This document shows, piece after piece, positions 30,436-42,351 of a DNA stretch of 64,000 bases. Made by a program: the position numbers and the translations under genes. The notes below the pieces were generated by a model, which saw only the letters and a list, made by a program, of their open reading frames with translations, was not told where the DNA came from and ran no database searches. The stretch is from positions 62,001 through 126,000 of IMG/VR virus record IMGVR_UViG_3300048924_000100; one strand, given 5' to 3'. Each line of letters starts with the position of its first letter. The stretch's first letter is position 1.

Positions 30436-31002
30436 TTATGAGTTAAGTAATGGGGTTACCTCCCAACCTTGGGTGTCACCCAGCGTGTAGTGCAGACATT
30501 TGAAACGCGACATGGCGTCACCCATGCGACATGCACGTTCAGAAAACCGTTCAGCGTAATCTTCAACGATGCAGTCCTCCCCAAGCTTATCGGCCAGGAT
30601 AACTCCGGCAGGATAAGCGACTCCGCCCAGGGATTGCAACATCTCGAGATTTTCCTTCAGCACTGTTTGAAACGAATCGATCTGGTAATCCATCCACCGC
30701 ATATCGTGGATGATCCCTCCCCGGACCAAAACGATCTCGTACTCTCCCAGTGCAGGAAGGAGTATCTCTTTGTAGAACTTTGAACGTGCATCAAGCAACG
30801 CTGCAATTTTTGCCTCGTTGCTTTTCTCAGGATGAGTAAGGACCAACCAGAGTTCCCGGTTGTCCAACAATGCATTTTCTCCGACGCCGACGTCAGAACA
30901 GATCCCGACCTTCTTACCTTGCAGGGTGAGTAGATCACTAAGTTTCGAAATACAAGCCGACACAGTTTGGTCTGACTGGCCATCAACGTTGAAGTAGTGC
31001 AT
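30436..31002 (-). CDS. Degenerate dNMP/thymidylate kinase-like protein
   Basis: YFNVDGQSDQTVS at the P-loop position and ILPALGEYEIVLVRG resemble TMK, but GKT and DR are missing. Confidence 0.5.
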   Translation of the reverse strand: MHYFNVDGQSDQTVSACISKLSDLLTLQGKKVGICSDVGVGENALLDNRELWLVLTHPEKSNEAKIAALLDARSKFYKEILLPALGEYEIVLVRGGIIHDMRWMDYQIDSFQTVLKENLEMLQSLGGVAYPAGVILADKLGEDCIVEDYAERFSERACRMGDAMSRFKCLHYTLGDTQGWEVTPLLNS

Positions 31003-31011
31003 CGTTCCTCC

Positions 31012-32394
31012 TTACTCAAAGTAGTCCTTGCTCAGGATACGCAGCACGATGTAGAGACACAGTGCCGTGCGTACCAGTTGCACGGTTTGCTGGGTTTTTA
31101 CCCCAGTTTGTTCTTTGACGATTTCGTCACCAAGGGTTCGAATAACCTTGACGGTATCGTTCTTGCTTCGAGGGGCGCCGTAGGCGCCGCGCATCTTGAT
31201 CAAGACGTCGTACACGTTAGTTTTCTTAATACCATTGGTGTGCAGGTATTCAAACATGTGCTGGAGAACGGCATCCGCAAACTGTTTGTATTCCGGCTTC
31301 TTCGGGTTGTTGTACAGCTTCGGAAACTGCTGAATCACGTACGCCAACTTGTCACGGGGAGTACCCTCTAGGGCATCCGCTGAGTACTTGATCAGCTCGT
31401 CTTTGTAGAACGAGGTGTCCTCGGTGAGGATGCGATCAAGGTAGAGACCATACTGGGTGATCTCTTTGGTCTGAGACTTCAGCGCCAACTCATCGCCAAG
31501 GTTAACCTTTGCACCGTCGATACGCACGATGTTGGTTTTGTTCTTGACGTCGTGAAAGACTTTGTTGATGTCGTTAATCGCCCGACGCAAACGGTTCTGG
31601 ATATCCCCGACCATGTAGACGATTTTCTTGTCGTCATCCATTTTGCTGAAAGCGTCGTAGTGGATACCCGTCTTCGGGTTGATGATGAACTCAGCCCGAG
31701 CCTCGATCAGCATCCGCCAGCTACCGTAACGCTTGATGTCGTATTTCAGACTCAGGCGGTTGTAGGTTTCCAGCACCACTTCTTTCCGTGCCATAAACGG
31801 ATAGTCGTTGTGGATGATCGAAGTCAAACACTTGTAGTGGTACATCGACAGGATATCGATCAGGGCCTGGTGTTTGGTATCCTTGCTCAGGCTTGAACGG
31901 TTAACCCGGTACAGCAGGTAGGGAATGGTCAGGTTGAAGGTATCGCCCACAACACTCCATTCCTTGTTCACCGCTTTGGCTGCGTGCAGGTTTTCCTTGA
32001 GTTCCTCTTCGTCAACGTCGAAGATCTCAGAGAACCACTGGTTACGGTCAGCCGTGGTGAAGGTGATCTTGTGCAAACCGAGATACGGAGAACCAAAGAA
32101 CTCCATATGGCTGACCACGCCCACACTTCGAGTTACGAACGAGTAGACGTAGCGACGCAGCACCTTGGCCCACTTCTCATCAACAACCAGGAAGTCACCA
32201 AACTTGTTGCAGATGTCCAGGATGGCGTGGTTACTGTCGAAGTCAATGCCCGACAGCAACGCCTCAGTACCCGTAACCGATTGGATCTCATGCGGATCCA
32301 TCGGAAACAGATACAGCCCATCTTTGGCCAGGATTGAGTGATCTTCCATGCCTTCAAACAAACTGAAGATCGACGGTTCAAGAAACGATGTCAT
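31012..32394 (-). CDS. Conserved phiKZ-like protein (probable virion component)
   Basis: 460 aa; N-terminal GME and GTE fit the S/A/G-X-E prohead-protease sites. Confidence 0.6.
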   Translation of the reverse strand: MTSFLEPSIFSLFEGMEDHSILAKDGLYLFPMDPHEIQSVTGTEALLSGIDFDSNHAILDICNKFGDFLVVDEKWAKVLRRYVYSFVTRSVGVVSHMEFFGSPYLGLHKITFTTADRNQWFSEIFDVDEEELKENLHAAKAVNKEWSVVGDTFNLTIPYLLYRVNRSSLSKDTKHQALIDILSMYHYKCLTSIIHNDYPFMARKEVVLETYNRLSLKYDIKRYGSWRMLIEARAEFIINPKTGIHYDAFSKMDDDKKIVYMVGDIQNRLRRAINDINKVFHDVKNKTNIVRIDGAKVNLGDELALKSQTKEITQYGLYLDRILTEDTSFYKDELIKYSADALEGTPRDKLAYVIQQFPKLYNNPKKPEYKQFADAVLQHMFEYLHTNGIKKTNVYDVLIKMRGAYGAPRSKNDTVKVIRTLGDEIVKEQTGVKTQQTVQLVRTALCLYIVLRILSKDYFE

Positions 32395-33239
32395 CAGAAT
32401 CTCCTTGGTACGGAACGACGAACGGCGTCGGTTACCCGCTGACGGTCACTGTAGGCCATCCGCTTGGTCCATTCACCGGTGAGGTATTCGTGGTAATCTT
32501 TCCAGGCATCACGATACTCCATGATGTCATCCTTGATGTCGCTCAAGGAAACACCGCTACGGATAATCGCTTCCTGGGTAGGGCGACGGCAGGAACGGTA
32601 GATGTATGCCTTGACTGCCAGTTCTACCAGATGAGCAAAGTGTTCGTGTTGGCGCGTCGAAATACTGCTCAGGCCTTCATCGAACTCCAGGATCATCTTG
32701 GCTGACATCGAGTAAGTACCCGAGTTCAAACCAAAGATCACAAAGCAGTTGTTACCCGTCATGTGGATGTTGTTGTAGGTCACCGGCATCTGACGGTTAG
32801 AACTGAGGCTGTCGATCAGCGCCTCGGTCATGTCCGTGATAGAACCCTGACCACACATGTCGTTGGTGTTGGTACTCATCCCCAACATACCCGTCGACGA
32901 AGTCATCGAACCCAGGTAGATCTCGGTTACCGAAATGATCTTGCGACCACCGGTGACGATATCGGGTACGTTCACTTCAATGCAGGCGTTACCCAAGTCG
33001 CGGATACGCGCTCCGCTCAGATCGATCAACTCGGTCTTACCGCCGTTGGCATTACAAGCCGGCAGTACCGTACGGTGAATCACTTTTTCGCGAATGCCTT
33101 GTTCCACTGTGGTGTGGTTAACGAGGTTGTACCAGTTGCCTGCGAAGTTACCGTTGGGTGATTCGAAAGCCAACTTCAAGAGGTAATCGTCGATGTCACA
33201 ATTGGTGACCCGATTGATGGCGTAATCCACCGCGTTCAT
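32394..33239 (-). CDS. Conserved phiKZ-like virion/hypothetical protein
   Basis: 281 aa; GGAG RBS; translationally coupled to the next gene. Confidence 0.65.
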   Translation of the reverse strand: MNAVDYAINRVTNCDIDDYLLKLAFESPNGNFAGNWYNLVNHTTVEQGIREKVIHRTVLPACNANGGKTELIDLSGARIRDLGNACIEVNVPDIVTGGRKIISVTEIYLGSMTSSTGMLGMSTNTNDMCGQGSITDMTEALIDSLSSNRQMPVTYNNIHMTGNNCFVIFGLNSGTYSMSAKMILEFDEGLSSISTRQHEHFAHLVELAVKAYIYRSCRRPTQEAIIRSGVSLSDIKDDIMEYRDAWKDYHEYLTGEWTKRMAYSDRQRVTDAVRRSVPRRF

Positions 33240-33630
33240 AATCTGGTACTCCTGAGAGACGGTGTAAATAAATTGGGTTAAGAGGGGTCATAGCATCCTG
33301 CTTCGACCTTCTGAGTCGAAAGGTACCGACCCTCTAAAAACGTCTCAGAGAAACGGTTCTCCAAAACTAGTACCGTAGGGTACCTGACATACAGAAAACC
33401 GCTAGGATCGTTTCCTAGACAGCTTAGAACGGATCCTGAGAGGGGTGATTGAGGTGAATAGAAACCCTCACTCAGACTCTCATAATTAAATTGCATTCTA
33501 CCTATATATTCTATTTGAGATCTGCCGCCGGGCCGGGAGCGGGGTGTTTAAATTTCTTGTTTTTAAAGTTCCTTCGGAAACTCTGTTAAGTTTTTTGTTT
33601 TTCCAATTGGCTAATTTCAAGAAAAACTAT

Positions 33631-33774
33631 TCCCTTCTGTTTACCTCGCGCACACGCGCTCCGTGCGCTAAAGAACCTAATATATATTTATATATATTTA
33701 TTCTTTATTGCTCTTTTAAAGCTTTTAAAAGCAAAGAAACGCCTGCACGCACACGCACGAGGTATACAGAGGGA
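33631..33774. repeat. Imperfect inverted repeat enclosing an AT-rich core and palindromes
   Basis: TCCCTTCTGTTTACCTCG ... CGAGGTATACAGAGGGA enclosing CGCACACGC x2, (TATATATTTA)x2 and GCTTTTAAAAGC. Confidence 0.7.
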
Positions 33775-33780
33775 TGGAGT

Positions 33781-33801
33781 ATTTCAAACCTAAATTATTA
33801 C
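33781..33801 (+). promoter_or_regulatory. Early promoter variant
   Basis: ATTTCAAACCTAAATTATTAC resembles the other six copies. Confidence 0.6.
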
Positions 33802-33865
33802 TTTGTCACCTAGGAAACCATATTCTAGAAAAACGAATTGCGAAACACATGAGGAGTTAAGATCC

Positions 33866-34429
33866 ATGACGACTGTAGCCTGGAACGGCAAGAAACTGGT
33901 AACGGATTCGCAAGTGTCGCTGGGGACGACGGCGAACCCTGGACCGGTCAAAAAGATTTTCGAACCTGAGGAAGGTGAGTATTGGGAGTGCTACGGCACC
34001 AAGGTCGTGGCATTCGGCATCTCGGGGGATGGCAAAGCAATTGGCTTCATGCGCGATCGACTGCGGGAAGGGATTAGCCACCGTACGCGTTTCGATGACA
34101 TCGAGGAAGTATCGTTCGGCGCGCTGGTGATTACCGAGGACGGCAACTGCTACCGCTGGCAGACCAACAAACGGAATGGCCGGCCACAGCACCAAGACCT
34201 GTTGCAACTCATGCCACCTTGCACCGTCGGTTCTGGTCACGCCTATGCCTTGGGGGTCATGTGGATTGGCAAGGACATCGAGACTGCTGTGAAGGCTGCG
34301 ATCAAACTGGACAAGTGGTCAGGTGGAGACTTACAAATCTGGGAACTTCCACCTAAGCCGGACGTCAAGTCTGTTCGTCCCGTCGCACCAACCGCACAAA
34401 CACAAGTGGCCGAAACACCAGCCGCCTAA
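33866..34429 (+). CDS. HslV/proteasome-beta-like Ntn hydrolase, copy 1
   Basis: GAGGAG RBS puts the start at M-TTVAWNG (N-terminal Thr). Also has TDSQ, KKIF, GISG, GSG and D..SGG. Confidence 0.8.
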   Translation: MTTVAWNGKKLVTDSQVSLGTTANPGPVKKIFEPEEGEYWECYGTKVVAFGISGDGKAIGFMRDRLREGISHRTRFDDIEEVSFGALVITEDGNCYRWQTNKRNGRPQHQDLLQLMPPCTVGSGHAYALGVMWIGKDIETAVKAAIKLDKWSGGDLQIWELPPKPDVKSVRPVAPTAQTQVAETPAA

Positions 34430-34443
34430 CCTGGAATAAATCT

Positions 34444-35040
34444 ATGAGCACCATAGCGTTCGACGGAAAACAACTGGTCACGGACTCGTCGGTTTCGATT
34501 GACGAGACGATCAGCCAAACCCAGTTCCGCAAGATCTTTACACCGATTGACGATAACGAGTACTGGGAGATCAACGGTGTACGGGCGTTGGCGTTCGCAG
34601 CTTTCTCGCTACCGATCATCAACCTGGAACTTCGCAAAGCTTTGCAGAAGGGATTGAACGAAGGGGACGACTCAAGCTGCTTCAGCGAAAACTTTGACGC
34701 GATCGTTATCGACGAGACAGGTCTGGCTTACCAGATTGTGGCGGTTTGGGTGGCGTATGGGGACGATCGAAAGCTTCGCATCAGCTTCATCCCGACTACT
34801 GGCATCGTCGCAATTGGGACGGGTGATCAATACGCACTGGCAGTGATGGCTGTGGGTAAATCTGCTCGGTCGGCGATCAAGGCAGCAATTGCCCTGAACG
34901 TTGATTCGGCCGGTAACCTGCAAAGCTTCGAAGTTCCACCGAAACCTGAAACACCATCGAAGCGCCCTCCGGCGGACACCACTACTGAAGCTGGCAAGTG
35001 GATCGACGTCGGTCAGCTGGATCCGGTTGTCAAGTTGTAA
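34444..35040 (+). CDS. HslV/proteasome-beta-like paralog, copy 2 (degenerate)
   Basis: M-STIAFDG, TDSS, RKIF, GTG and N..SAG; clearly homologous to copy 1. Confidence 0.75.
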   Translation: MSTIAFDGKQLVTDSSVSIDETISQTQFRKIFTPIDDNEYWEINGVRALAFAAFSLPIINLELRKALQKGLNEGDDSSCFSENFDAIVIDETGLAYQIVAVWVAYGDDRKLRISFIPTTGIVAIGTGDQYALAVMAVGKSARSAIKAAIALNVDSAGNLQSFEVPPKPETPSKRPPADTTTEAGKWIDVGQLDPVVKL

Positions 35041-35054
35041 ATCTCCTATGCTAT

Positions 35055-35280
35055 GTGAACTCGTGAGTTTGCTCCTGCTTGAAGATAGTTAGCCCTGGCG
35101 TCCCCGTGGGAATAGTTTGGAGTCCCTACCCACATCAGTCAGTCGTCCCCCATTAACGATTGGCTGTCCCGGCAAAGCATCGCTGGGAAAAGCTCCACCT
35201 GCCAACTTAGTCTCATCGTGTCCGGACATCCCACTGTGGTGTCCGGATGCGGTGGGATTATTTCGCATTTTGTTTTTTGT
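35055..35280 (+). ncRNA. Candidate structured non-coding RNA
   Basis: No credible ORF. It starts at a TATG late-promoter-like motif and ends in a ~23-bp G-U-rich hairpin plus T tract. Confidence 0.4.
35208..35280 (+). terminator. Long-stem terminator
   Basis: 35208-35230 pairs with 35238-35260 using several G-U pairs, followed by T tracts. Confidence 0.7.
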
Positions 35281-35424
35281 TACCGGATGGATATATTTTA
35301 TACTTGCACACGTCTTTCGGTTTTTCTCATAGCTGGGTTTTCCGATGATGTGGATTGGAGGTGGGTCCTACTGTCCTTCGGTTAGCAGGTGCTTCTCTCA
35401 CAGGTGCAGCCTTTCTGAGGACAT

Positions 35425-35484
35425 CCCCTGTTGCGGAGTTTCTTGGGCATGCCAAGCACTCTACTTGCGACAGGGGTTATTTTT
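35425..35484 (+). terminator. Intrinsic terminator
   Basis: CCCCTGTTGC ... GCGACAGGGG plus TTATTTTT. Confidence 0.65.
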
Positions 35485-35540
35485 CATCTGTGGATAGATT
35501 CTTGGGCGATGTAGGCAATGGGTTGAAGTCATGTAAAAAG

Positions 35541-35558
35541 ATTTCAAGCCTACATTAC
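35541..35558 (+). promoter_or_regulatory. Early promoter of phuZ
   Basis: ATTTCAAGCCTACATTAC. Confidence 0.7.
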
Positions 35559-35622
35559 TAACACGTTGACCCAATTGGTCTAACGAATTCTTTCAACTGG
35601 TAACTCAAAGAGAACATTTCAC

Positions 35623-36621
35623 ATGAATGCAAATACTTCGGATCTGGCATACTTCCTCTGCGGTGGTACCGGTATTAACATCGGCGTGGCTCTGAAAAAG
35701 GGTACTCACACCGACAACAACAAAAACGCTTTCTTCGTCGGTCTGGATTCCTCGGATCGTAACAGCTCCGGCGACTTGTTCGAAGTTGTGCAGATGGCCG
35801 TTGCCAACGACCCTGACCAGAAGGCCAAGGGTTCGGGTAAAGTCAAAGCAACCAACTACCCACAAGCTGAACAGTTCATCAACCAGTTCCTGACCAAGCA
35901 CAAGCCACGTGATTACAACATCATCGTCTGCTCCACCGGCGGTGGTACTGGTTCGATGCTGGCTTTCGTTCTGGCGCGCATGCTGTTCGAACGCGATCAA
36001 CTGGTCGTGCTGTGCTTCATCAACGACAAGACCTCGCAGGTTGAAGAGATCAACGTCGTGAACAGCTACCGTTCGTACGCGTCGCTGACCACTCCTGGTT
36101 CGCTGAACCGCGTGGTTCCGTACATGGAGTTCGACAACACCCTGACCAACACTCGTGGTGAAGTCAACCAAATGGTCATCGACAAGCTCGATGTGGCCAG
36201 CCTGTTCCTGAGCAACGTCAACAAGGAACAAGACCACACTGACATGAAGAACCTGCTGAACTTCAGCAAGCACTACGGCGTTCCACCGTCCATGTCGCGT
36301 ATTCGCTTCTACGACGAGAAAGGTGTTGCAGACTTCAAGGGCAAGGTGCCGGTTGCAGTCTCTTCCCTGTTCGAAAGCAGCGATGCAGTCATCCCACGTT
36401 TCAACGGCACCGTGATCCGTTCCACCGGCGTGTTCGCTGACGGCGTTAAGCGTCCAAGCAACGCCCAGGAACTGCACATGGTCCTGGACCACGGCGAAGC
36501 TCTGAAAGAGCTGGAGAAACACATCGAAGCAATGGAAACCCGCAAGGTTGAAACTTCGTCGACCTTCACCCAGCAGAAAGATCTCTCTGCCGGTGCGGAT
36601 GACAAAGGCTTCTTCATGTAA
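35623..36621 (+). CDS. phuZ: Phage tubulin PhuZ
   Basis: CGGTGINIG and the GGGTGS tubulin signature; D..D..N T7 loop; acidic C-terminal tail (ADDKGFFM). Confidence 0.95.
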   Translation: MNANTSDLAYFLCGGTGINIGVALKKGTHTDNNKNAFFVGLDSSDRNSSGDLFEVVQMAVANDPDQKAKGSGKVKATNYPQAEQFINQFLTKHKPRDYNIIVCSTGGGTGSMLAFVLARMLFERDQLVVLCFINDKTSQVEEINVVNSYRSYASLTTPGSLNRVVPYMEFDNTLTNTRGEVNQMVIDKLDVASLFLSNVNKEQDHTDMKNLLNFSKHYGVPPSMSRIRFYDEKGVADFKGKVPVAVSSLFESSDAVIPRFNGTVIRSTGVFADGVKRPSNAQELHMVLDHGEALKELEKHIEAMETRKVETSSTFTQQKDLSAGADDKGFFM

Positions 36622-36629
36622 GTCCGCTT

Positions 36630-36689
36630 AGCTAGTGTAGGGTACCGGGGAGTGATCCTCGGTACCTTATAGCTGCTATATTGTTTTTT
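36630..36689 (+). terminator. Intrinsic terminator
   Basis: AGGGTACCGGGG / CCTCGGTACCTT plus T tract. Confidence 0.7.
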
Positions 36690-36753
36690 GATATCTTTTT
36701 CTACCGGCATCCTCATTACTATGAGGCATGGTTTTTATAAAGGGGTCAAGAAG

Positions 36754-37050
36754 GTGTCTAGAAGCTTCTCTCTGGATTTAAAATCCTATACCCTGGACGT
36801 ACCATTGGGTGCAGAACCAACGGTCTTAAATCGGACCGTAACCACGCTTGATCTGCATGCAATGCTCGTTGATGAAGGGTTTAATTCATTCGAGGTCCCC
36901 AGAGGGTATCACCGTCTTTGGGGAAATGACATTAACGCGTTAAGGGATCAGGTAGCTAGTAAGCTGTTGGGGGTACCTAGAGACGCTGTAGTCTGCATAA
37001 AGACTTTTGGGAAACTTCGGCAGCAAGTACTGGTTACACTGAAATACTAA
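36754..37050 (+). CDS. Hypothetical protein
   Basis: ORF in the conserved post-phuZ cluster; the start codon is uncertain. Confidence 0.5.
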   Translation: MSRSFSLDLKSYTLDVPLGAEPTVLNRTVTTLDLHAMLVDEGFNSFEVPRGYHRLWGNDINALRDQVASKLLGVPRDAVVCIKTFGKLRQQVLVTLKY

Positions 37051-37063
37051 GAAGGGGCGAGCA

Positions 37064-37615
37064 GTGATCAGATATGACGTCATGAACTTGGCTAATAGCT
37101 TTGTCATGGAAGTGGAAGACATTCCAGCAGTCAGGGAGTCAATCGCTGTACGGATGCTCGAAGCTGCCGTGGAGATTATTAATTATCCATCGCGTGAAGA
37201 CAGCATCCTTGATCAATTGGGGAGAGTGTACGAAGATCATTACGAGATGCTGACACCGGATCTTGTAATCATCAAGGTTAAAGAAGCACTGCAAAAGGAA
37301 ATGAAGCGGCGGTCGTGGGATAAGCGACTCCATGTTCAGATCCGTTTTAACAAGGTCTCCCACGCGTTTCATCAGGCCCTTATTGACATGGACCTGGATG
37401 CTACGTTGAGAGCTGCAGCTAAGCCTAAGCCAGTTCAGCGCATTACACGGGCTAAGGTAACAGGCGACACTATCAACGACAATCCAAGTCAGGAGGCCCT
37501 CAATGAATTCCTTGAAACTGTTGAGCGTCGGAGTCTTCGGCGAACTCCGCAGCTTTCAGATCGACAACCGACAGTTGTTAGAGAACCTTTTGAGCGAGAT
37601 CTCAGAAATTACTAA
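37064..37615 (+). CDS. Hypothetical protein
   Basis: GTG start after AAGGGG; 183 aa. Confidence 0.6.
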   Translation: MIRYDVMNLANSFVMEVEDIPAVRESIAVRMLEAAVEIINYPSREDSILDQLGRVYEDHYEMLTPDLVIIKVKEALQKEMKRRSWDKRLHVQIRFNKVSHAFHQALIDMDLDATLRAAAKPKPVQRITRAKVTGDTINDNPSQEALNEFLETVERRSLRRTPQLSDRQPTVVREPFERDLRNY

Positions 37616-38000
37616 CGATTACGTTCCCCATCTACATCGGGAAATGGCCTGGGGTTTGCTTGAGATGGGTGTTGAACAGCTCACGTATTCCAAAGGTGTT
37701 AATCGTAACGACTGTCATTACAATCAGAAAGCCGCTCGTTGCTACACGTACAAAGATGAGAGAGACGATATCCTTGCCACCATTATCTCTCACCTATCGA
37801 CACAGATAGGCAACGCGACCAATAGAACGTCACTGGATCATCCTTTTTTATACCAGATCCTTGCAAACGGGGACGTAATGGTTAGTGTGGATGTCCGGGA
37901 CCTAGAGCCCCTGGCAGACGATTTCATCAGTCAGGAGGAAAGCGGTTATGAGCAAGATTCTTGGCATACCACTGGGGTGCATACCGATAGCCTTTGGTGA
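37503..38000 (+). CDS. Hypothetical protein
   Basis: GGAGG RBS before ATG 37503; overlaps both neighbours. Confidence 0.55.
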   Translation: MNSLKLLSVGVFGELRSFQIDNRQLLENLLSEISEITNDYVPHLHREMAWGLLEMGVEQLTYSKGVNRNDCHYNQKAARCYTYKDERDDILATIISHLSTQIGNATNRTSLDHPFLYQILANGDVMVSVDVRDLEPLADDFISQEESGYEQDSWHTTGVHTDSLW

Positions 38001-39446: not shown

Positions 39447-41531
39447 ATGACTGCCGCAGCTAAACACACATCTCCTTTCCTAGCAGAGGAGTATATACCC
39501 AATCGTAACTTGCTCCAGAACTACCACTACATGGCCGCCGCTTATTTGACGGCTCTTTACAAGTGGGACTACAACACAGTACTGGAGTTGGTAGAGAAAG
39601 TATTTGTACCCAACCAGAACGGCTTTAAGGAAGCCAAGTTCAGAGTCTTTAAGAAGAACAAGTACGGCGACCGTGTTCCTGACATCATGCCGGCTCGTGA
39701 GTTCTTCCAGACAGTTCAGGATAATAACTGGCACCTGTCTCCGTCGTTTGTGGCTTACACGCACACCAACCAAGAACAGTCGATCAACTCGATTGGTACT
39801 GAAACCTTTATCGAATTCCGTCGCCTTTATAAAGGCAAGATGAAAGAAGCTATTTCGTCTGGCGATAAAGAAGCTGCACAAGCGTTTGATGAAATCCAGA
39901 AGGCCCTGAAGATCTTTAACAACGCCCAGTCTGGTGCGATGTCGTCTTCCGGTACTCCGCTGATGAACAAGTCGGGTCACACTACTCTGACCTCTATCTG
40001 CCGTTCCCTGACCTCCGTCGCCAACCTGATGAACGAGCGACTGATTACGGGTAACCGGTTGCTACTCAGTTACAACAAGTCCATGGAACTGTTTATCAGT
40101 ACCCTGGCGTTTGCTAAGCGGGACAAGATCCAGGCGGTAATCGACAAGTACGAAATGAGTTACGCCACCGTAGACCAGGTCATGGACATGGTGAAACGTT
40201 GCGCGTCGTACTACTGGAGCAACCCGACCCAGATCGCAGCTATCCGTACCTTTATGGAAATGCTGTCACCTCTGGAGCTGACAATCATCCTCTGCACCAT
40301 GGACCTCCGTGGGCTGTACACCACCAACCAAGCACTGATCAAACGGTTCTTCGATGAATGGTGCAAAGTTCCTGAGATGCCAACGTCGTTTGAAAACGTT
40401 ACTACCATCAAGGCAGCTAACGACGACTACAAGACACTCTGCACTACCAAGCTGGGCAAAGGGGCGACGGCAGATCAGACCGCGTATCTCAACGCTTACC
40501 ACGTCAGCCTGGAAGTTAAATGGCGAGACTTCATTGAAGCTTTCTTGAAAGCCGATATCCCGCCGTCTGGTGTATTCAGCGTTAAGGAGTTGGTACGTGA
40601 GAACGTTGTAACCTCCGACACTGACTCGATGATCTATTCGGTAGACGCCATCATTGATGACTACATTACCGATAAGAAAGACGAGCTGGCATTTAACGGG
40701 GTACTGACGTACTTCATTCGTTGCATTGCCGTAGACCAGCATGCGCGTCTTAGCACCAACATGAACGTGGCTAAGAAGTTCCGTTATCGTCTGAACATGA
40801 AGAACGAATACCTCTTCAGTTCGTACGTGACTACTTCGATGTCCAAGCACTACTATGCGTTGCAGTTGATGCTGGAGGGTATTCTCTACGATAACCCTAA
40901 ACTGGAACTCAAGGGCGTGCACCTCAGGGGGATCAAGATCGCACTCAAGGTCCGGGAGTTCACGAACAAGCTGATGCGCGATGTGTTGAATGCCATTTAC
41001 ACCAACCAGCAACTGGATGCTCCAGAGTTGTTAAAAGGTGTGGGTGATTTGGAACGCGCTCTGTTTGAAGAACTGGAGAAGGGTGGTTGGAGCTGGTTGA
41101 CCAAGAACGGAATCAAAGAAGAGACGGCCTACAGCAACGCTGATTCGTCGATCTACTTCTACCACGAGATGTGGAAGCAGGTGTTCGCCGATACCTATGG
41201 CGACGCACCAGAGCTGCCGTACCGTGCGTATAAGGTCAACGTTACACTGGACAACAAGACCAAGGTCAAGAAGTTTACTGAGACCTACGGGGAAAGCGAT
41301 GTGGTCAAGAAGATGATGGCTTACATTGAGGCGCGTGGATCGCTAACCTCCGTGTATGTTCCGATTGACATGATCGAATCGATTGGTGGTATCCCGAAAG
41401 AGATCCTACCGATTGTGGATACACGCTTGCTTATTGCACAGAACTTCAAGTCCATCTACGCCATTCTGGAATCCTTGGGCTTGTACATCATGAACAGCAA
41501 GGTAACTCGTCTGGTATCTGACGAGCATTAA
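39447..41531 (+). CDS. Family B DNA polymerase, polymerase subunit (phiKZ gp50-like)
   Basis: Motif B QKALKIFNNAQSG, motif C SDTDSMIY, plus KHYY and ELKGV. Confidence 0.85.
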   Translation: MTAAAKHTSPFLAEEYIPNRNLLQNYHYMAAAYLTALYKWDYNTVLELVEKVFVPNQNGFKEAKFRVFKKNKYGDRVPDIMPAREFFQTVQDNNWHLSPSFVAYTHTNQEQSINSIGTETFIEFRRLYKGKMKEAISSGDKEAAQAFDEIQKALKIFNNAQSGAMSSSGTPLMNKSGHTTLTSICRSLTSVANLMNERLITGNRLLLSYNKSMELFISTLAFAKRDKIQAVIDKYEMSYATVDQVMDMVKRCASYYWSNPTQIAAIRTFMEMLSPLELTIILCTMDLRGLYTTNQALIKRFFDEWCKVPEMPTSFENVTTIKAANDDYKTLCTTKLGKGATADQTAYLNAYHVSLEVKWRDFIEAFLKADIPPSGVFSVKELVRENVVTSDTDSMIYSVDAIIDDYITDKKDELAFNGVLTYFIRCIAVDQHARLSTNMNVAKKFRYRLNMKNEYLFSSYVTTSMSKHYYALQLMLEGILYDNPKLELKGVHLRGIKIALKVREFTNKLMRDVLNAIYTNQQLDAPELLKGVGDLERALFEELEKGGWSWLTKNGIKEETAYSNADSSIYFYHEMWKQVFADTYGDAPELPYRAYKVNVTLDNKTKVKKFTETYGESDVVKKMMAYIEARGSLTSVYVPIDMIESIGGIPKEILPIVDTRLLIAQNFKSIYAILESLGLYIMNSKVTRLVSDEH

Positions 41532-41541
41532 GGAGCACGTA

Positions 41542-41913
41542 ATGACTAAATTGACCAAGGCTGATAACTTCATGTTTTTCAAGGATAGTGCCACTGGTTT
41601 GGTATTTGCAGGGGAGGGGGCTTTCCTGTATCCGGAAAATATGAAGATCATGGTTCAGCCAACGGTGACTGTCGCCATGACCGACGAGATGCATGTCGAA
41701 AAGGGCGTGTACGTTACCTTCAACTATTGTGACCACGATCACGCCTTCTACGTGGGTAAACCAGAAGAAGTCCCTAAGCTGTTGAAAGCACTGTGGGAAG
41801 GTCGTGAATCCAAGATCGTGGTAGAACCTGACTACTACAGCTACCTGATGGATGTCAAGCATCAGGCGCATCTGGATTCCTGGTCGCGTTCTCCTGATCG
41901 GATGGGGAGTTAA
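41542..41913 (+). CDS. Hypothetical protein
   Basis: AAGGAG RBS; 123 aa. Confidence 0.65.
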   Translation: MTKLTKADNFMFFKDSATGLVFAGEGAFLYPENMKIMVQPTVTVAMTDEMHVEKGVYVTFNYCDHDHAFYVGKPEEVPKLLKALWEGRESKIVVEPDYYSYLMDVKHQAHLDSWSRSPDRMGS

Positions 41914-41918
41914 TCATC

Positions 41919-42236
41919 GTGGGTACAGTACATTACTTACCCACTTCCCGGAACAAGGAACACCTTGAACAAGTACTCAGTGAACGTCAGTTCCGAACGG
42001 TAGTACTGGGTAGCCGTCTGGGTAGTTACACTGACGCTACAGCCAGCATGATAAAAGCTCGGGATGAGTTGGACAAGTGGTATGGGTTCTTTGGGCCTGT
42101 CCTGCGTTTCTTAAATCCGATGCAGCACATGTTGGCGGTAGAAACGTTTGCCAGGGCCGAACACAAACAACGGGAAGCTTACAGGGAGTTCATGAGGGCT
42201 AAGAACAAGCTACAAGAGCAGTGGCACCTGAAGTAA
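41919..42236 (+). CDS. Hypothetical protein
   Basis: GGGGAG RBS, GTG start. Confidence 0.55.
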   Translation: MGTVHYLPTSRNKEHLEQVLSERQFRTVVLGSRLGSYTDATASMIKARDELDKWYGFFGPVLRFLNPMQHMLAVETFARAEHKQREAYREFMRAKNKLQEQWHLK

Positions 42237-42250
42237 CAACCAGCCATAAA

Positions 42251-42294
42251 CCTATAACTCCTACTACTCCTTGCGGAGTAGTAGGAGTATAAGG
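42251..42294. terminator. Bidirectional terminator
   Basis: ACTCCTACTACTCC-TTGC-GGAGTAGTAGGAGT between convergent genes. Confidence 0.8.
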
Positions 42295-42351
42295 AAATCA
42301 ATCTTTTTAAATTTTTATATTAAATATGGGATCACTTCGTCGGATTAACCG

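What the first reader, a model, noticed from the sequence alone, without database searches (positions are those of the whole stretch)
33781..35040. Tandem proteasome-beta/HslV-like pair: one intact and one degenerate subunit under an early promoter
Seen: two adjacent paralogs. Copy 1 begins M-T-T and keeps the Ntn-protease residue set (Thr1, Asp-Ser, Lys, GISG, GSG, D..SGG). Copy 2 begins M-S-T and has GISG changed to AAFS and the late Asp changed to Asn. Both end in Pro/Lys-rich tails (PPKP...RP). No AAA+ partner is in the window. Known: 20S proteasomes and HslV use an N-terminal Thr, and proteasomes combine active and inactive paralogous subunits. Inference: this could be a phage-encoded, ATP-independent hetero-oligomeric protease (or deconjugase) made early, next to the PhuZ/nucleus genes, for example to degrade host defence proteins or strip ubiquitin-like tags.
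Basis: partly seen in the sequence, partly recalled or inferred. Interest (0 to 1): 0.75.

Follow-up and report, generated by a model that had tools for sequence, protein, structure and literature searches.

The report
Paired proteasome-like peptidase genes in phage
An uncultivated jumbo phage carries two adjacent, co-transcribed HslV/proteasome-like genes next to its tubulin gene: one has all the catalytic residues and the other has lost some but is still kept by selection, and the pair evolves much faster than its neighbours, which suggests a small virus-made two-subunit protease whose target is unknown.

Summary
The two genes are 33866-34429 (copy 1, 187 aa, starts M-T-T) and 34444-35040 (copy 2, 198 aa, starts M-S-T). 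They are paralogs (36% identity, E 2e-32). Both models fold like HslV (Z about 17) and both hit PHROG 1040, "peptidase HslV family". This is the PPH family of Fuchs et al. 2021, so the family itself is known.

Copy 1 keeps Thr1, Asp17, Lys33, Ser129, Asp166 and Ser169. Copy 2 keeps Ser1, Asp17 and Lys33, but has Asn at 166, Thr at 129 and a hydrophobic loop in place of the glycine loop.

Copy 2 is not a decaying duplicate. Its orthologs sit in the same slot in at least 10 related uncultivated phages, and dN/dS is 0.05-0.28.

Some relatives carry one or three copies. Extra copies with Ser1 or Gly1 arose at least three times, and only on jumbo-phage contigs.

The pair is a divergence island: 52-62% amino-acid identity, against 95-97% for the flanking genes.

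Support for a hetero-complex is weak (ipSAE 0.60, best control 0.01). No AAA+ unfoldase was found in the 214-kb genome. The promoter motif is real, but its timing is unknown.

The function is unproven. This is a new variant of a known kind.

The parts
33782..33800 (+). Phage-specific promoter-like motif (TTTCAAACCTAAATTATTA) upstream of copy 1
   Evidence: There are 3 matches in the window with up to 3 mismatches, against 0.02 expected. The core AAACCTA[ACT]ATTA[CT]TA occurs 7 times in the 214-kb genome, all on the + strand, with 0 for the reversed control. The same motif is annotated as 'putative phage promoter' before PhuZ and gp33 of phage EL. Timing class is unknown.
33851..33856 (+). Shine-Dalgarno GAGGAG, 9 nt before the copy 1 ATG
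   Evidence: Read directly from the sequence. It is conserved upstream of copy 1 in relatives.
33866..34429 (+). Copy 1: PPH/HslV-like Ntn peptidase subunit with the full catalytic set (Thr1, Asp17, Lys33, Ser129, Asp166, Ser169 in proteasome numbering = T2, D14, K30, S123, D149, S152 counted from Met)
   Evidence: PHROG 1040, 1.7e-28. AF2 pLDDT 89.4. HslV Z 17.5, rmsd 2.0 A, with model residue 2 aligned on chain residue 1. Profile alignment to beta5. These residues are invariant or nearly so in 30 family members.
34349..34381 (+). Copy 1 C-terminal motif PPKPDVKSVRP (residues 162-172)
   Evidence: P-P-x-P-x3-S-x-R-P is conserved in both paralogs, in EL gp15 and in most of the jumbo-phage branch of the family. 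Its role is unknown.
34444..35040 (+). Copy 2: paralogous subunit with Ser1, Asp17 and Lys33 kept, but Ser129->Thr, Asp166->Asn and the Gly loop GISGDG replaced by AAFSLP
   Evidence: PHROG 1040, 3.1e-20. AF2 pLDDT 85.2. HslV Z 17.1. Ortholog clade and residue pattern. dN/dS 0.05-0.28.
34936..34968 (+). Copy 2 C-terminal motif PPKPETPSKRP (residues 165-175)
   Evidence: F-E-V-P-P-x-P-E-T-P-S-[KV]-R-P is invariant in all 11 copy-2 orthologs aligned, more conserved than most of the domain.
35211..35267 (+). Intrinsic-terminator-like hairpin (20-bp stem) followed by a T-rich run; probable end of the two-gene transcript
   Evidence: Terminator scan. The region is about 0.9 identical to relatives although the genes upstream are only 0.5-0.65 identical.
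35542..35560 (+). Second copy of the promoter-like motif, upstream of PhuZ (context)
35623..36621 (+). PhuZ tubulin (context; downstream boundary of the slot)
   Evidence: tblastn gives 45% identity to the annotated PhuZ of phages EL and RisingSun. It is 79-96% identical in the metagenomic relatives.
32394..33239 (-). DUF7484 / phrog_3179 gene, divergently oriented (context; upstream boundary of the slot)
   Evidence: Pfam tag in relatives. PHROG hit. 93-98% identical in relatives.

Best explanation
The two genes encode two differentiated subunits of one phage-made, HslV-like threonine peptidase of the PPH family.

Shown:
- Both have the HslV/proteasome-beta fold and no propeptide, so removal of the initiator Met would expose residue 2 as the nucleophile.
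- Copy 1 has every catalytic residue.
- Copy 2 keeps Ser1, Asp17 and Lys33, but has lost Asp166 and the glycine loop that normally carries the oxyanion-hole amide.
- Both are under purifying selection and always travel together, 14-15 nt apart, behind one promoter-like motif and before one terminator-like hairpin.

Inferred:
- Copy 1 does the cutting.
- Copy 2 is a weak or silent subunit that co-assembles with copy 1. Contacts are predicted through helices H3/H4, the surface that joins rings in HslV and the 20S proteasome. Copy 2 would tune assembly, access or substrate choice.
- The complex works without a phage unfoldase.
- The exceptional divergence of the cassette reflects interaction with a fast-changing partner, most plausibly host proteins.
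For: - Paralogy.
- Family: PHROG 1040. The model has a single helix (57-68) where HslV has H1 and H2, as described for PPH in PMC8665760.
- Fold.
- Catalytic mapping onto beta5.
- Loss of activity expected from the copy 2 changes: the yeast beta5 T1S mutant loses 40-45% of activity, and D166N loses about 60% or is 'drastically reduced' (PMC4792962).
- Copy 2 orthologs are in the same slot in L004, L010, L013, L015-L021 and L034.
- dN/dS is 0.05-0.28 for copy 2 and 0.05-0.39 for copy 1.
- The divergences of copy 1 and copy 2 track each other pair by pair.
- Extra paralogs with Ser1 or Gly1 arose repeatedly beside a canonical Thr1 copy.
- Predicted complex: ipSAE 0.60/0.59/0.68 against a best control of 0.01. 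The tool's verdict is 'weak support'. The interface is residues 18-25 and 123-151 of copy 1 and 18-25 and 126-156 of copy 2.
- No AAA+ gene was found in the genome.
- One transcription unit.
- Divergence island.
Against: - No biochemical or expression data exist for any member of this phage family that I could find.
- The complex score is in the band the tool calls weak. It may only reflect the likeness of both chains to families with solved rings, and homo-oligomers were not folded for comparison.
- Copy 2 keeps the primary triad in all orthologs, so it could be an active serine-nucleophile enzyme in its own right. The closest ortholog, P0016, even keeps Ser129.
- A host unfoldase (HslU, ClpX) could be the partner.
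- High dS inside the cassette (1.5-2.8, against 0.3-0.8 in the flanks) may mean allele exchange by recombination rather than fast in-place evolution.
Confidence: 0.5

Rival explanations
1. The two genes encode two independent homo-oligomeric peptidases with different specificities. Copy 2 would be an active enzyme that uses Ser1 as its nucleophile, not a silent subunit.
For: Ser1, Asp17 and Lys33 are invariant in all copy-2 orthologs. B. subtilis CodW is reported to be an HslV-like N-terminal serine protease (Kang et al. 2001, as cited in PMC7468587). The beta5 T1S and D166N mutants keep part of their activity. In L044/L045 and L006 both tandem copies are fully canonical.
Against: Positions 129, 166, 169 and 170 vary freely within the copy-2 clade (T/S/P/D, N/C, S/T/C, A/H/G/D), as expected if they no longer serve catalysis. 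The glycine loop is replaced by hydrophobic residues. Other extra paralogs have Gly1 and cannot be nucleophilic. The stem branch of the clade is long (0.62-0.94).
Confidence: 0.22
2. The phage subunits act on or with the host HslUV system. They would either recruit host HslU (or another host unfoldase) to degrade chosen proteins, or poison host HslV rings by mixing into them.
For: The best structural matches of both copies are bacterial HslV. No phage unfoldase was found. The conserved C-terminal proline-rich motif could be a docking element. Fast evolution fits contact with host proteins.
Against: Sequence identity to HslV is only 17-22% and no Pfam Proteasome hit is obtained. Helix H2 is missing. 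The host is unknown, so no host HslU could be tested. Nothing here shows binding.
Confidence: 0.15
3. This is not a protease. It would be a proteasome-fold enzyme with another chemistry, such as a ligase/transpeptidase like connectase or an amidase that removes a protein tag.
For: The proteasome-like superfamily contains non-proteolytic members such as connectase (PMC8665760). PPH has never been assayed.
Against: Copy 1 keeps the complete set of residues used for peptide hydrolysis in HslV and beta5, including Ser129, Asp166 and Ser169. No ubiquitin-like or tag gene was noticed beside it.
Confidence: 0.08
4. Copy 2 is a recent duplicate on its way to being lost.
For: Catalytic second-shell residues are changed.
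Against: The reading frame is intact. Orthologs are found in at least 10 related genomes. dN/dS is 0.05-0.28. The fold model is confident. The tail motif is invariant.
Confidence: 0.01

Closest known systems
[quoted passage not shown]
   Same: Both are compact HslV-like Ntn domains that start M-T-T with no propeptide, lack helix H2 and are phage-borne. EL gp15 sits in the same slot between the DUF7484 gene and PhuZ.
   Different: Described PPH proteins are about 140 aa and no pairing was reported. In all 110 deposited phage records with a match there is a single copy. Here there are two differentiated paralogs of about 165 aa plus a conserved proline-rich tail, evolving as a fast cassette. Direct comparison with the paper's representative sequence was not possible.
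Bacterial HslV (ClpQ) of the HslUV protease
   Same: It is the best structural match (Z 16.9-17.5, rmsd 2.0-2.2 A). Thr1 directly follows Met, and the Asp17, Lys33, Ser, Asp and Gly motifs are in the same places.
   Different: Identity is only 17-22%, with no Pfam Proteasome hit. There is no HslU in the phage genome. One helix is missing and there is an extra C-terminal tail. HslV is a homo-dodecamer.
BPH (bacterial proteasome homolog, Thiobacillus denitrificans; PMC5777263)
   Same: It is an HslV relative with no known unfoldase partner. The structural match is Z 16.1-16.2.
   Different: BPH is a homo-tetradecamer of cellular origin, with no paralog pairing.
20S proteasome beta rings of eukaryotes (active beta1/2/5 plus inactive beta3/4/6/7)
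   Same: Paralogous Ntn subunits have differentiated, and only some keep the full active site. Predicted contacts run through H3/H4, the ring-ring surface (the role of H3/H4 is from my own knowledge of 20S structures).
   Different: There are no alpha subunits and no propeptides. The oligomer state is unknown and co-assembly is only predicted. The copy 2 clade retains the nucleophile position as Ser rather than losing it.
B. subtilis CodW
   Same: It is an HslV-like protein reported to use an N-terminal Ser, as copy 2 might.
   Different: CodW works with the CodX ATPase and is a single-gene homo-oligomer.

Membership tests
Proteasome-like Ntn hydrolase superfamily (HslV / beta subunit fold) | Four-layer alpha-beta-beta-alpha sandwich superimposable on HslV or beta subunits | tested here: met
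   Copy 1: Z 17.5, rmsd 2.0 A over 143 residues to HslV 4hnz. Copy 2: Z 17.1 to E. coli HslV 4g4e. Foldseek probability is 1.00 to beta5.
Proteasome-like Ntn hydrolase superfamily (HslV / beta subunit fold) | Nucleophile (Thr, rarely Ser) at the mature N-terminus | tested here: met
   Copy 1 starts M-T-T and copy 2 starts M-S-T. Model residue 2 aligns with residue 1 of mature HslV. Actual Met removal was not tested.
Proteasome-like Ntn hydrolase superfamily (HslV / beta subunit fold) | Asp17 and Lys33 of the primary triad | tested here: met
   D14 and K30 (counted from Met) align with D17 and K33 of beta5 and are invariant in both paralog clades.
Proteasome-like Ntn hydrolase superfamily (HslV / beta subunit fold) | Second-shell Ser129, Asp166 and Ser169, and the glycine loop around Gly47 | tested here: inconclusive
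   Met for copy 1 (S123, D149, S152; loop G-I-S-G-D-G, with Ser at the position aligned by eye to Gly47). Not met for copy 2 (Thr, Asn, Ser; loop A-A-F-S-L-P).
HslV proper (partner of HslU) | Match to the curated Proteasome/HslV sequence models | tested here: not met
   There is no Pfam hit at E up to 10 for copy 1, and only a chance hit for copy 2. phmmer against PDB finds no HslV. Only a family profile reaches beta5, at E 2e-4.
HslV proper (partner of HslU) | A cognate HslU-type AAA+ unfoldase encoded alongside | tested here: not met
   PF00004, PF07724, TIGR00390, TIGR00382 and RAY gp116 give no match in the 214-kb record, while the controls ring in 14 of 14 genomes. Host-encoded HslU is not testable because the host is unknown.
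PPH (Fuchs et al. 2021) / PHROG 1040 | Sequence membership in the phage cluster | tested here: met
   PHROG 1040 at 1.7e-28 and 3.1e-20. tblastn hits 110 phage records annotated 'peptidase HslV family'. Equating PHROG 1040 with PPH is my inference, because the paper's representative could not be fetched.
PPH (Fuchs et al. 2021) / PHROG 1040 | Compact subunit lacking helix H2, with no propeptide and no C-terminal S12/H5 | tested here: met
   DSSP of both models shows a single helix (57-68 and 57-69) between strands where HslV has H1 and H2. Both start at M-T/S. They differ from the described ~140-aa form by a 20-35-aa tail.
Hetero-oligomeric proteasome-type particle (active plus inactive paralogs in one complex) | Physical co-assembly of the paralogs | tested here: inconclusive
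   ipSAE is 0.60 (runs 0.59-0.68) against a best control of 0.01. The tool's verdict is 'weak support', and in its calibration the mark was reached by 58 of 80 solved complexes and 2 of 110 mismatched pairs. No homo-oligomer comparison was made and there are no experimental data.
Hetero-oligomeric proteasome-type particle (active plus inactive paralogs in one complex) | Ring or double-ring quaternary structure | not testable with these tools
   Coordinates are not returned, and only 6 chains could be folded.

The most novel reading that the evidence does not exclude
Nucleus-forming jumbo phages have repeatedly built their own miniature multi-subunit 'proteasome'. One canonical Thr1 subunit would co-assemble with one or two attenuated or dead paralogs (Ser1 or Gly1), without any phage unfoldase. 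The genes form a fast-evolving cassette under the same promoter type as PhuZ and the phage chaperonin, and the particle would be aimed at variable host proteins such as defence factors. This would be a viral re-run of the subunit differentiation that produced the eukaryotic 20S beta ring.
Probability: 0.3. Interest if true: 0.8.

Novelty: new variant of a known kind. Interest (0 to 1): 0.6.

Why it matters
The phage proteasome homologs (PPH) were catalogued in 2021, but I found no report of their function, assembly or evolution.

This locus suggests that in one branch of nucleus-forming jumbo phages the gene has multiplied into arrays of one, two or three paralogs with graded active sites. The arrays sit at a fixed place next to PhuZ and are the most divergent retained genes in a 20-kb neighbourhood.

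If the subunits co-assemble, this is a simple, tractable model for how mixed active/inactive proteasome rings evolve. It would also be a candidate phage tool against host proteins.

The cultured relative, phage EL, has a single copy (gp15). That gives a direct experimental entry point.

Tried and rejected
- Erwinia phage RAY gp116 ('HslVU protease family', nuclear; bioRxiv 10.1101/2023.02.24.529968). It is an HslU-like ATPase, not an HslV homolog. Its two 179-aa neighbours, gp117 and gp118, are unrelated to the window proteins. No homolog of gp116 is in this genome.
- Pfam gives no usable hit for either protein.
- A single-sequence PDB search gives only chance hits.
- A megablast of the locus against deposited phages gives nothing. 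The nearest cultured relatives are only 37% (copy 1) and 45% (PhuZ) identical.
- Rfam finds nothing in 32000-37000 at E up to 1.
- No RNA sequencing run was listed for the pair, so read laying was not used and transcript ends and timing stay untested. The DNA holders are root, rhizosphere and soil metagenomes.
- The mBio paper on JSS1_004, which co-mentions HslV and jumbo phages, concerns a kinase and the host hslUV genes. It is irrelevant here.
- A broad alignment (A5) was too diverse for the search for related loci. A narrower one (A6) worked.
- A first attempt to translate the chaperonin ORF used a wrong frame. It was corrected.
- The idea that the pair is unique to this genome is rejected.
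- The idea that all tandem arrays descend from one duplication is rejected. The second copies of L007, L069 and L035 belong to a different deep clade.
Full report
**1. What is there**

The window is bases 62001-126000 of a 214,198-bp IMG/VR virus record estimated 93% complete. It encodes a PhuZ tubulin at 35623-36621. The closest cultured relatives are Pseudomonas phage EL and Erwinia phage RisingSun, about 45% identical in PhuZ. It is therefore an uncultivated EL-like, presumably nucleus-forming, jumbo phage. DNA reads holding the locus come from root, rhizosphere and soil metagenomes.

Two + strand ORFs lie between a divergently transcribed DUF7484 gene (32394-33239) and PhuZ:
- Copy 1 is 33866-34429 (187 aa, M-T-T-V...).
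- Copy 2 is 34444-35040 (198 aa, M-S-T-I...).

They are clear paralogs, with 36% identity over 181 residues and E 2e-32. Copy 1 has a GAGGAG ribosome-binding site 9 nt upstream. Copy 2 starts 14 nt after the copy 1 stop and has only an AGGA-like element. This junction is conserved in relatives.

**2. Fold and family**

Pfam gives nothing. Both proteins match PHROG 1040, 'peptidase HslV family', at 1.7e-28 and 3.1e-20.

AlphaFold2 models are confident, with pLDDT 89.4 and 85.2. Both superimpose best on bacterial and trypanosomal HslV (Z 16.9-17.5, rmsd 2.0-2.2 A, about 143 residues). Model residue 2 falls on residue 1 of the mature enzymes. Proteasome beta5 and BPH follow closely.

A profile of the family aligns with human beta5. 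Counted from Met, the copy 1 equivalences are:

| Copy 1 residue | beta5 residue |
|---|---|
| D14 | Asp17 |
| K30 | Lys33 |
| G122-S123-G124 | Gly128-Ser129-Gly130 |
| D149 | Asp166 |
| S152 | Ser169 |

These residues, plus T2, are invariant or nearly so in 30 canonical family members.

The models have one helix (57-68) where HslV has H1 and H2. [quoted passage not shown] I therefore file both proteins under PPH. They are not HslV proper: there is no HslV model hit and no HslU.

The family is large. A profile search found 6,670 representatives at E up to 1e-3 and 872 at 1e-10. Almost all of the best 150 begin M-T-T or a close variant.

**3. Is copy 2 degenerate?**

Only in part. Its changes relative to the catalytic set are:

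| Position (proteasome numbering) | Copy 2 in the window |
|---|---|
| Thr1 | Ser |
| Asp17, Lys33 | kept |
| Ser129 | Thr |
| Asp166 | Asn |
| Ser169 | kept |
| Glycine loop G-I-S-G-D-G | A-A-F-S-L-P |

In its orthologs Ser1, Asp17 and Lys33 are invariant. Positions 129 (T/S/P/D), 166 (N/C), 169 (S/T/C) and 170 (A/H/G/D) drift.

In yeast beta5, T1S costs 40-45% of activity. D166N costs about 60% of activity, or activity is 'drastically reduced' (PMC4792962). An N-terminal Ser nucleophile has a reported precedent in B. subtilis CodW.

The sequence therefore points to an attenuated, perhaps silent, active site. It does not prove a dead one.

**4. Is copy 2 a decaying or private duplicate?**

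No. The same order (DUF7484, copy 1 type, copy 2 type, PhuZ) is found in metagenomic contigs L004, L010 and L013, in L011, L012 and L014 (cut), and in seven IMG/VR records of up to 228 kb (L015-L021 = L037-L043).

NG86 dN/dS between orthologs is 0.05-0.28 for copy 2 and 0.05-0.39 for copy 1. dS is near saturation for the distant pairs.

In maximum-likelihood trees the copy-2 clade is well supported (100/97-100) and sits on a long stem (0.62-0.94). Its sister is the second, still canonical, copy of the L044 pair (98/85). The degeneration therefore followed an older duplication.

**5. The wider pattern**

All 110 deposited phage records with a match have one copy. So do all of the roughly 43 small-phage IMG/VR contigs surveyed.

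Arrays occur only on jumbo-phage contigs. Of 14 jumbo-type IMG/VR loci, 10 have pairs:
- Seven have Thr1 plus Ser1 (L037-L043).
- Two have Thr1 plus Thr1 (L044, L045).
- One has Thr1 plus Ser1 from another lineage (L069).

Two contigs carry three tandem copies:
- L034 has a Gly1 copy that has also lost Lys33, then a Thr1 copy, then a Ser1 copy.
- L035 has Thr1, Thr1 and Gly1 copies.

L036 and phage EL have one copy in the same slot.

The extra copies of L007, L069 and L035 belong to a different deep clade from copy 2. Nucleophile-substituted extra paralogs beside a canonical one therefore arose at least three times. A subunit that cannot cut, yet is retained under selection next to one that can, is most simply explained by co-assembly. 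That is an inference.

**6. Co-assembly test**

Three chains of copy 1 (1-166) and three of copy 2 (1-167) were folded together. ipSAE was 0.60, 0.59 and 0.68, against 0.00-0.01 for three controls. The tool's own verdict is 'weak support'. In its calibration the mark was reached by 58 of 80 solved complexes and 2 of 110 mismatched pairs, but scores at or below 0.60 were rare among true complexes.

The confident contacts are residues 18-25 and 123-151 of copy 1 and 18-25 and 126-156 of copy 2. That is the H3/H4 helices (125-133 and 138-148 in the model) plus a hairpin. From my knowledge of 20S and HslV structures, H3/H4 is the ring-to-ring surface. It is also the most conserved stretch between the paralogs.

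The result may reflect family likeness only. Homo-oligomers were not folded.

**7. Partner and regulation**

No AAA+ unfoldase was found in the whole record with PF00004, PF07724, hslU or clpX models, or with the HslU-like RAY gp116. A host unfoldase cannot be excluded.

The motif at 33782-33800 is not chance. It has 3 sites in the window against 0.02 expected. Its core has 7 sites in the genome, all on the + strand, and none for the reversed control. It matches the 'putative phage promoter' annotated before PhuZ and gp33 of EL.

The seven sites precede a GroEL-like chaperonin (phrog_5725), the pair, PhuZ and four genes of unknown function. Three of these were matched to phrog_15064, phrog_3209 and phrog_27591; the gene after the seventh site was not searched.

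A 20-bp hairpin with a T-run at 35211-35267 follows copy 2.

The pair therefore looks like one transcription unit within a small regulon. Whether that regulon is early is not shown, and no RNA runs were listed.

**8. A divergence island**

Against seven relatives:

| Gene | Amino-acid identity | dN | dS |
|---|---|---|---|
| DUF7484 | 93-98% | 0.02-0.04 | 0.5-0.9 |
| PhuZ (five closest relatives) | 92-96% | 0.02-0.05 | 0.3-0.4 |
| PhuZ (L013, L017) | 79-80% | 0.13-0.15 | 0.5-0.8 |
| Copy 1 | 59-77% | 0.14-0.34 | 1.6-2.2 |
| Copy 2 | 49-64% | 0.29-0.44 | 1.5-2.8 |

Sliding nucleotide identity falls from about 0.9 to 0.5-0.65 exactly over the two ORFs and recovers at the terminator. The promoter region stays at 0.88-0.92 against L018.

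In a 20-kb comparison with one complete relative, the median 300-nt identity is 0.84. The four bins of the pair (0.57-0.67) are among the lowest, and only an apparent replacement at 41400-42300 is lower. Copy 2 (52%) and copy 1 (62%) are the least conserved of the full-length syntenic genes; the next is 67%.

The divergences of the two copies track each other, so they move as a cassette. This fits diversifying pressure or exchange of old alleles by recombination. The raised dS favours at least some of the latter.

**9. An unexplained conserved feature**

The tail motif W/F-E-x-P-P-x-P-x3-S-x-R-P is present in both paralogs, in EL gp15 and in most of the jumbo-phage branch. It is absent from the short small-phage members. 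In the copy-2 clade F-E-V-P-P-x-P-E-T-P-S-[KV]-R-P is invariant. In the monomer models the PP-x-P start of the motif has pLDDT of about 91-94 and the rest drops to 63-72. It may be a latch between subunits or a docking site. I could not test this.

**10. Verdict**

The family assignment (an HslV-like Ntn peptidase, specifically the known PPH family) is secure.

The new elements are:
- the differentiated, selected, co-inherited paralog arrays at a fixed slot in EL-like jumbo phages;
- the repeated evolution of such arrays;
- their exceptional divergence.

I found no publication describing these.

A two-subunit peptidase with one strong and one weak or silent subunit is the best-supported mechanism, at about 0.5. 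The target and biological role remain open.

Noticed in passing
window 33900-35000 compared with L015-L021, L004, L013, L094: The two peptidase genes form a sharp divergence island. Nucleotide identity is 0.5-0.65, against about 0.9 in the promoter, the terminator and the flanking genes. Both dN and dS are several-fold higher than in DUF7484 and PhuZ.
   Followed up: yes
L034:910-2655 and L035:1272-3250: Two related contigs carry three tandem PPH paralogs in the same slot before the tubulin gene. Each array includes a copy that starts M-G (no nucleophile), and one of these has also lost Lys33.
   Followed up: partly
G000:C1:10393, 47568, 95786, 97546, 114799, 165452, 198385 (window 33786, 35546, 52799): A seven-member promoter-like motif family, AAACCTA[ACT]ATTA[CT]TA, lies entirely on the + strand and is shared with phage EL. 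It precedes a GroEL-like chaperonin, the peptidase pair, PhuZ and four unknown genes. The chaperonin and the proteasome-like genes may therefore be co-regulated.
   Followed up: partly
window 34349-34381 and 34936-34968: A proline-rich C-terminal motif, P-P-x-P-x3-S-x-R-P, is conserved across both paralogs and across the jumbo-phage branch of the family. It is invariant in the copy-2 clade. Its function is unknown.
   Followed up: partly
window 33240-33865 and 35041-35622: Two unusually long non-coding spacers (about 625 and 580 bp) flank the pair, as in phage EL. Parts are highly conserved among relatives (33600-33900; 35250-35400, which includes a 20-bp hairpin at 35211-35257). There is no Rfam match.
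   Followed up: partly
window 41400-42300 compared with L094: This stretch has only 0.39-0.64 nucleotide identity to an otherwise ~84% identical relative. It is probably a replaced or inserted gene.
   Followed up: no
L009:1353-4164 (Erwinia phage RAY gp116-gp118): RAY's nuclear-localised HslU-like ATPase gp116 is followed by two 179-aa genes (phrog_6870, phrog_10877). These are not detectably related to HslV or PPH by BLASTP or PHROG. The partner of that ATPase stays unidentified.
   Followed up: partly
window 30436-31002 (-) and 37503-38000 (+): After the pair, these two are the next most divergent syntenic genes in the 20-kb comparison, at 67% and 70% amino-acid identity. Their function is unknown.
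   Followed up: no
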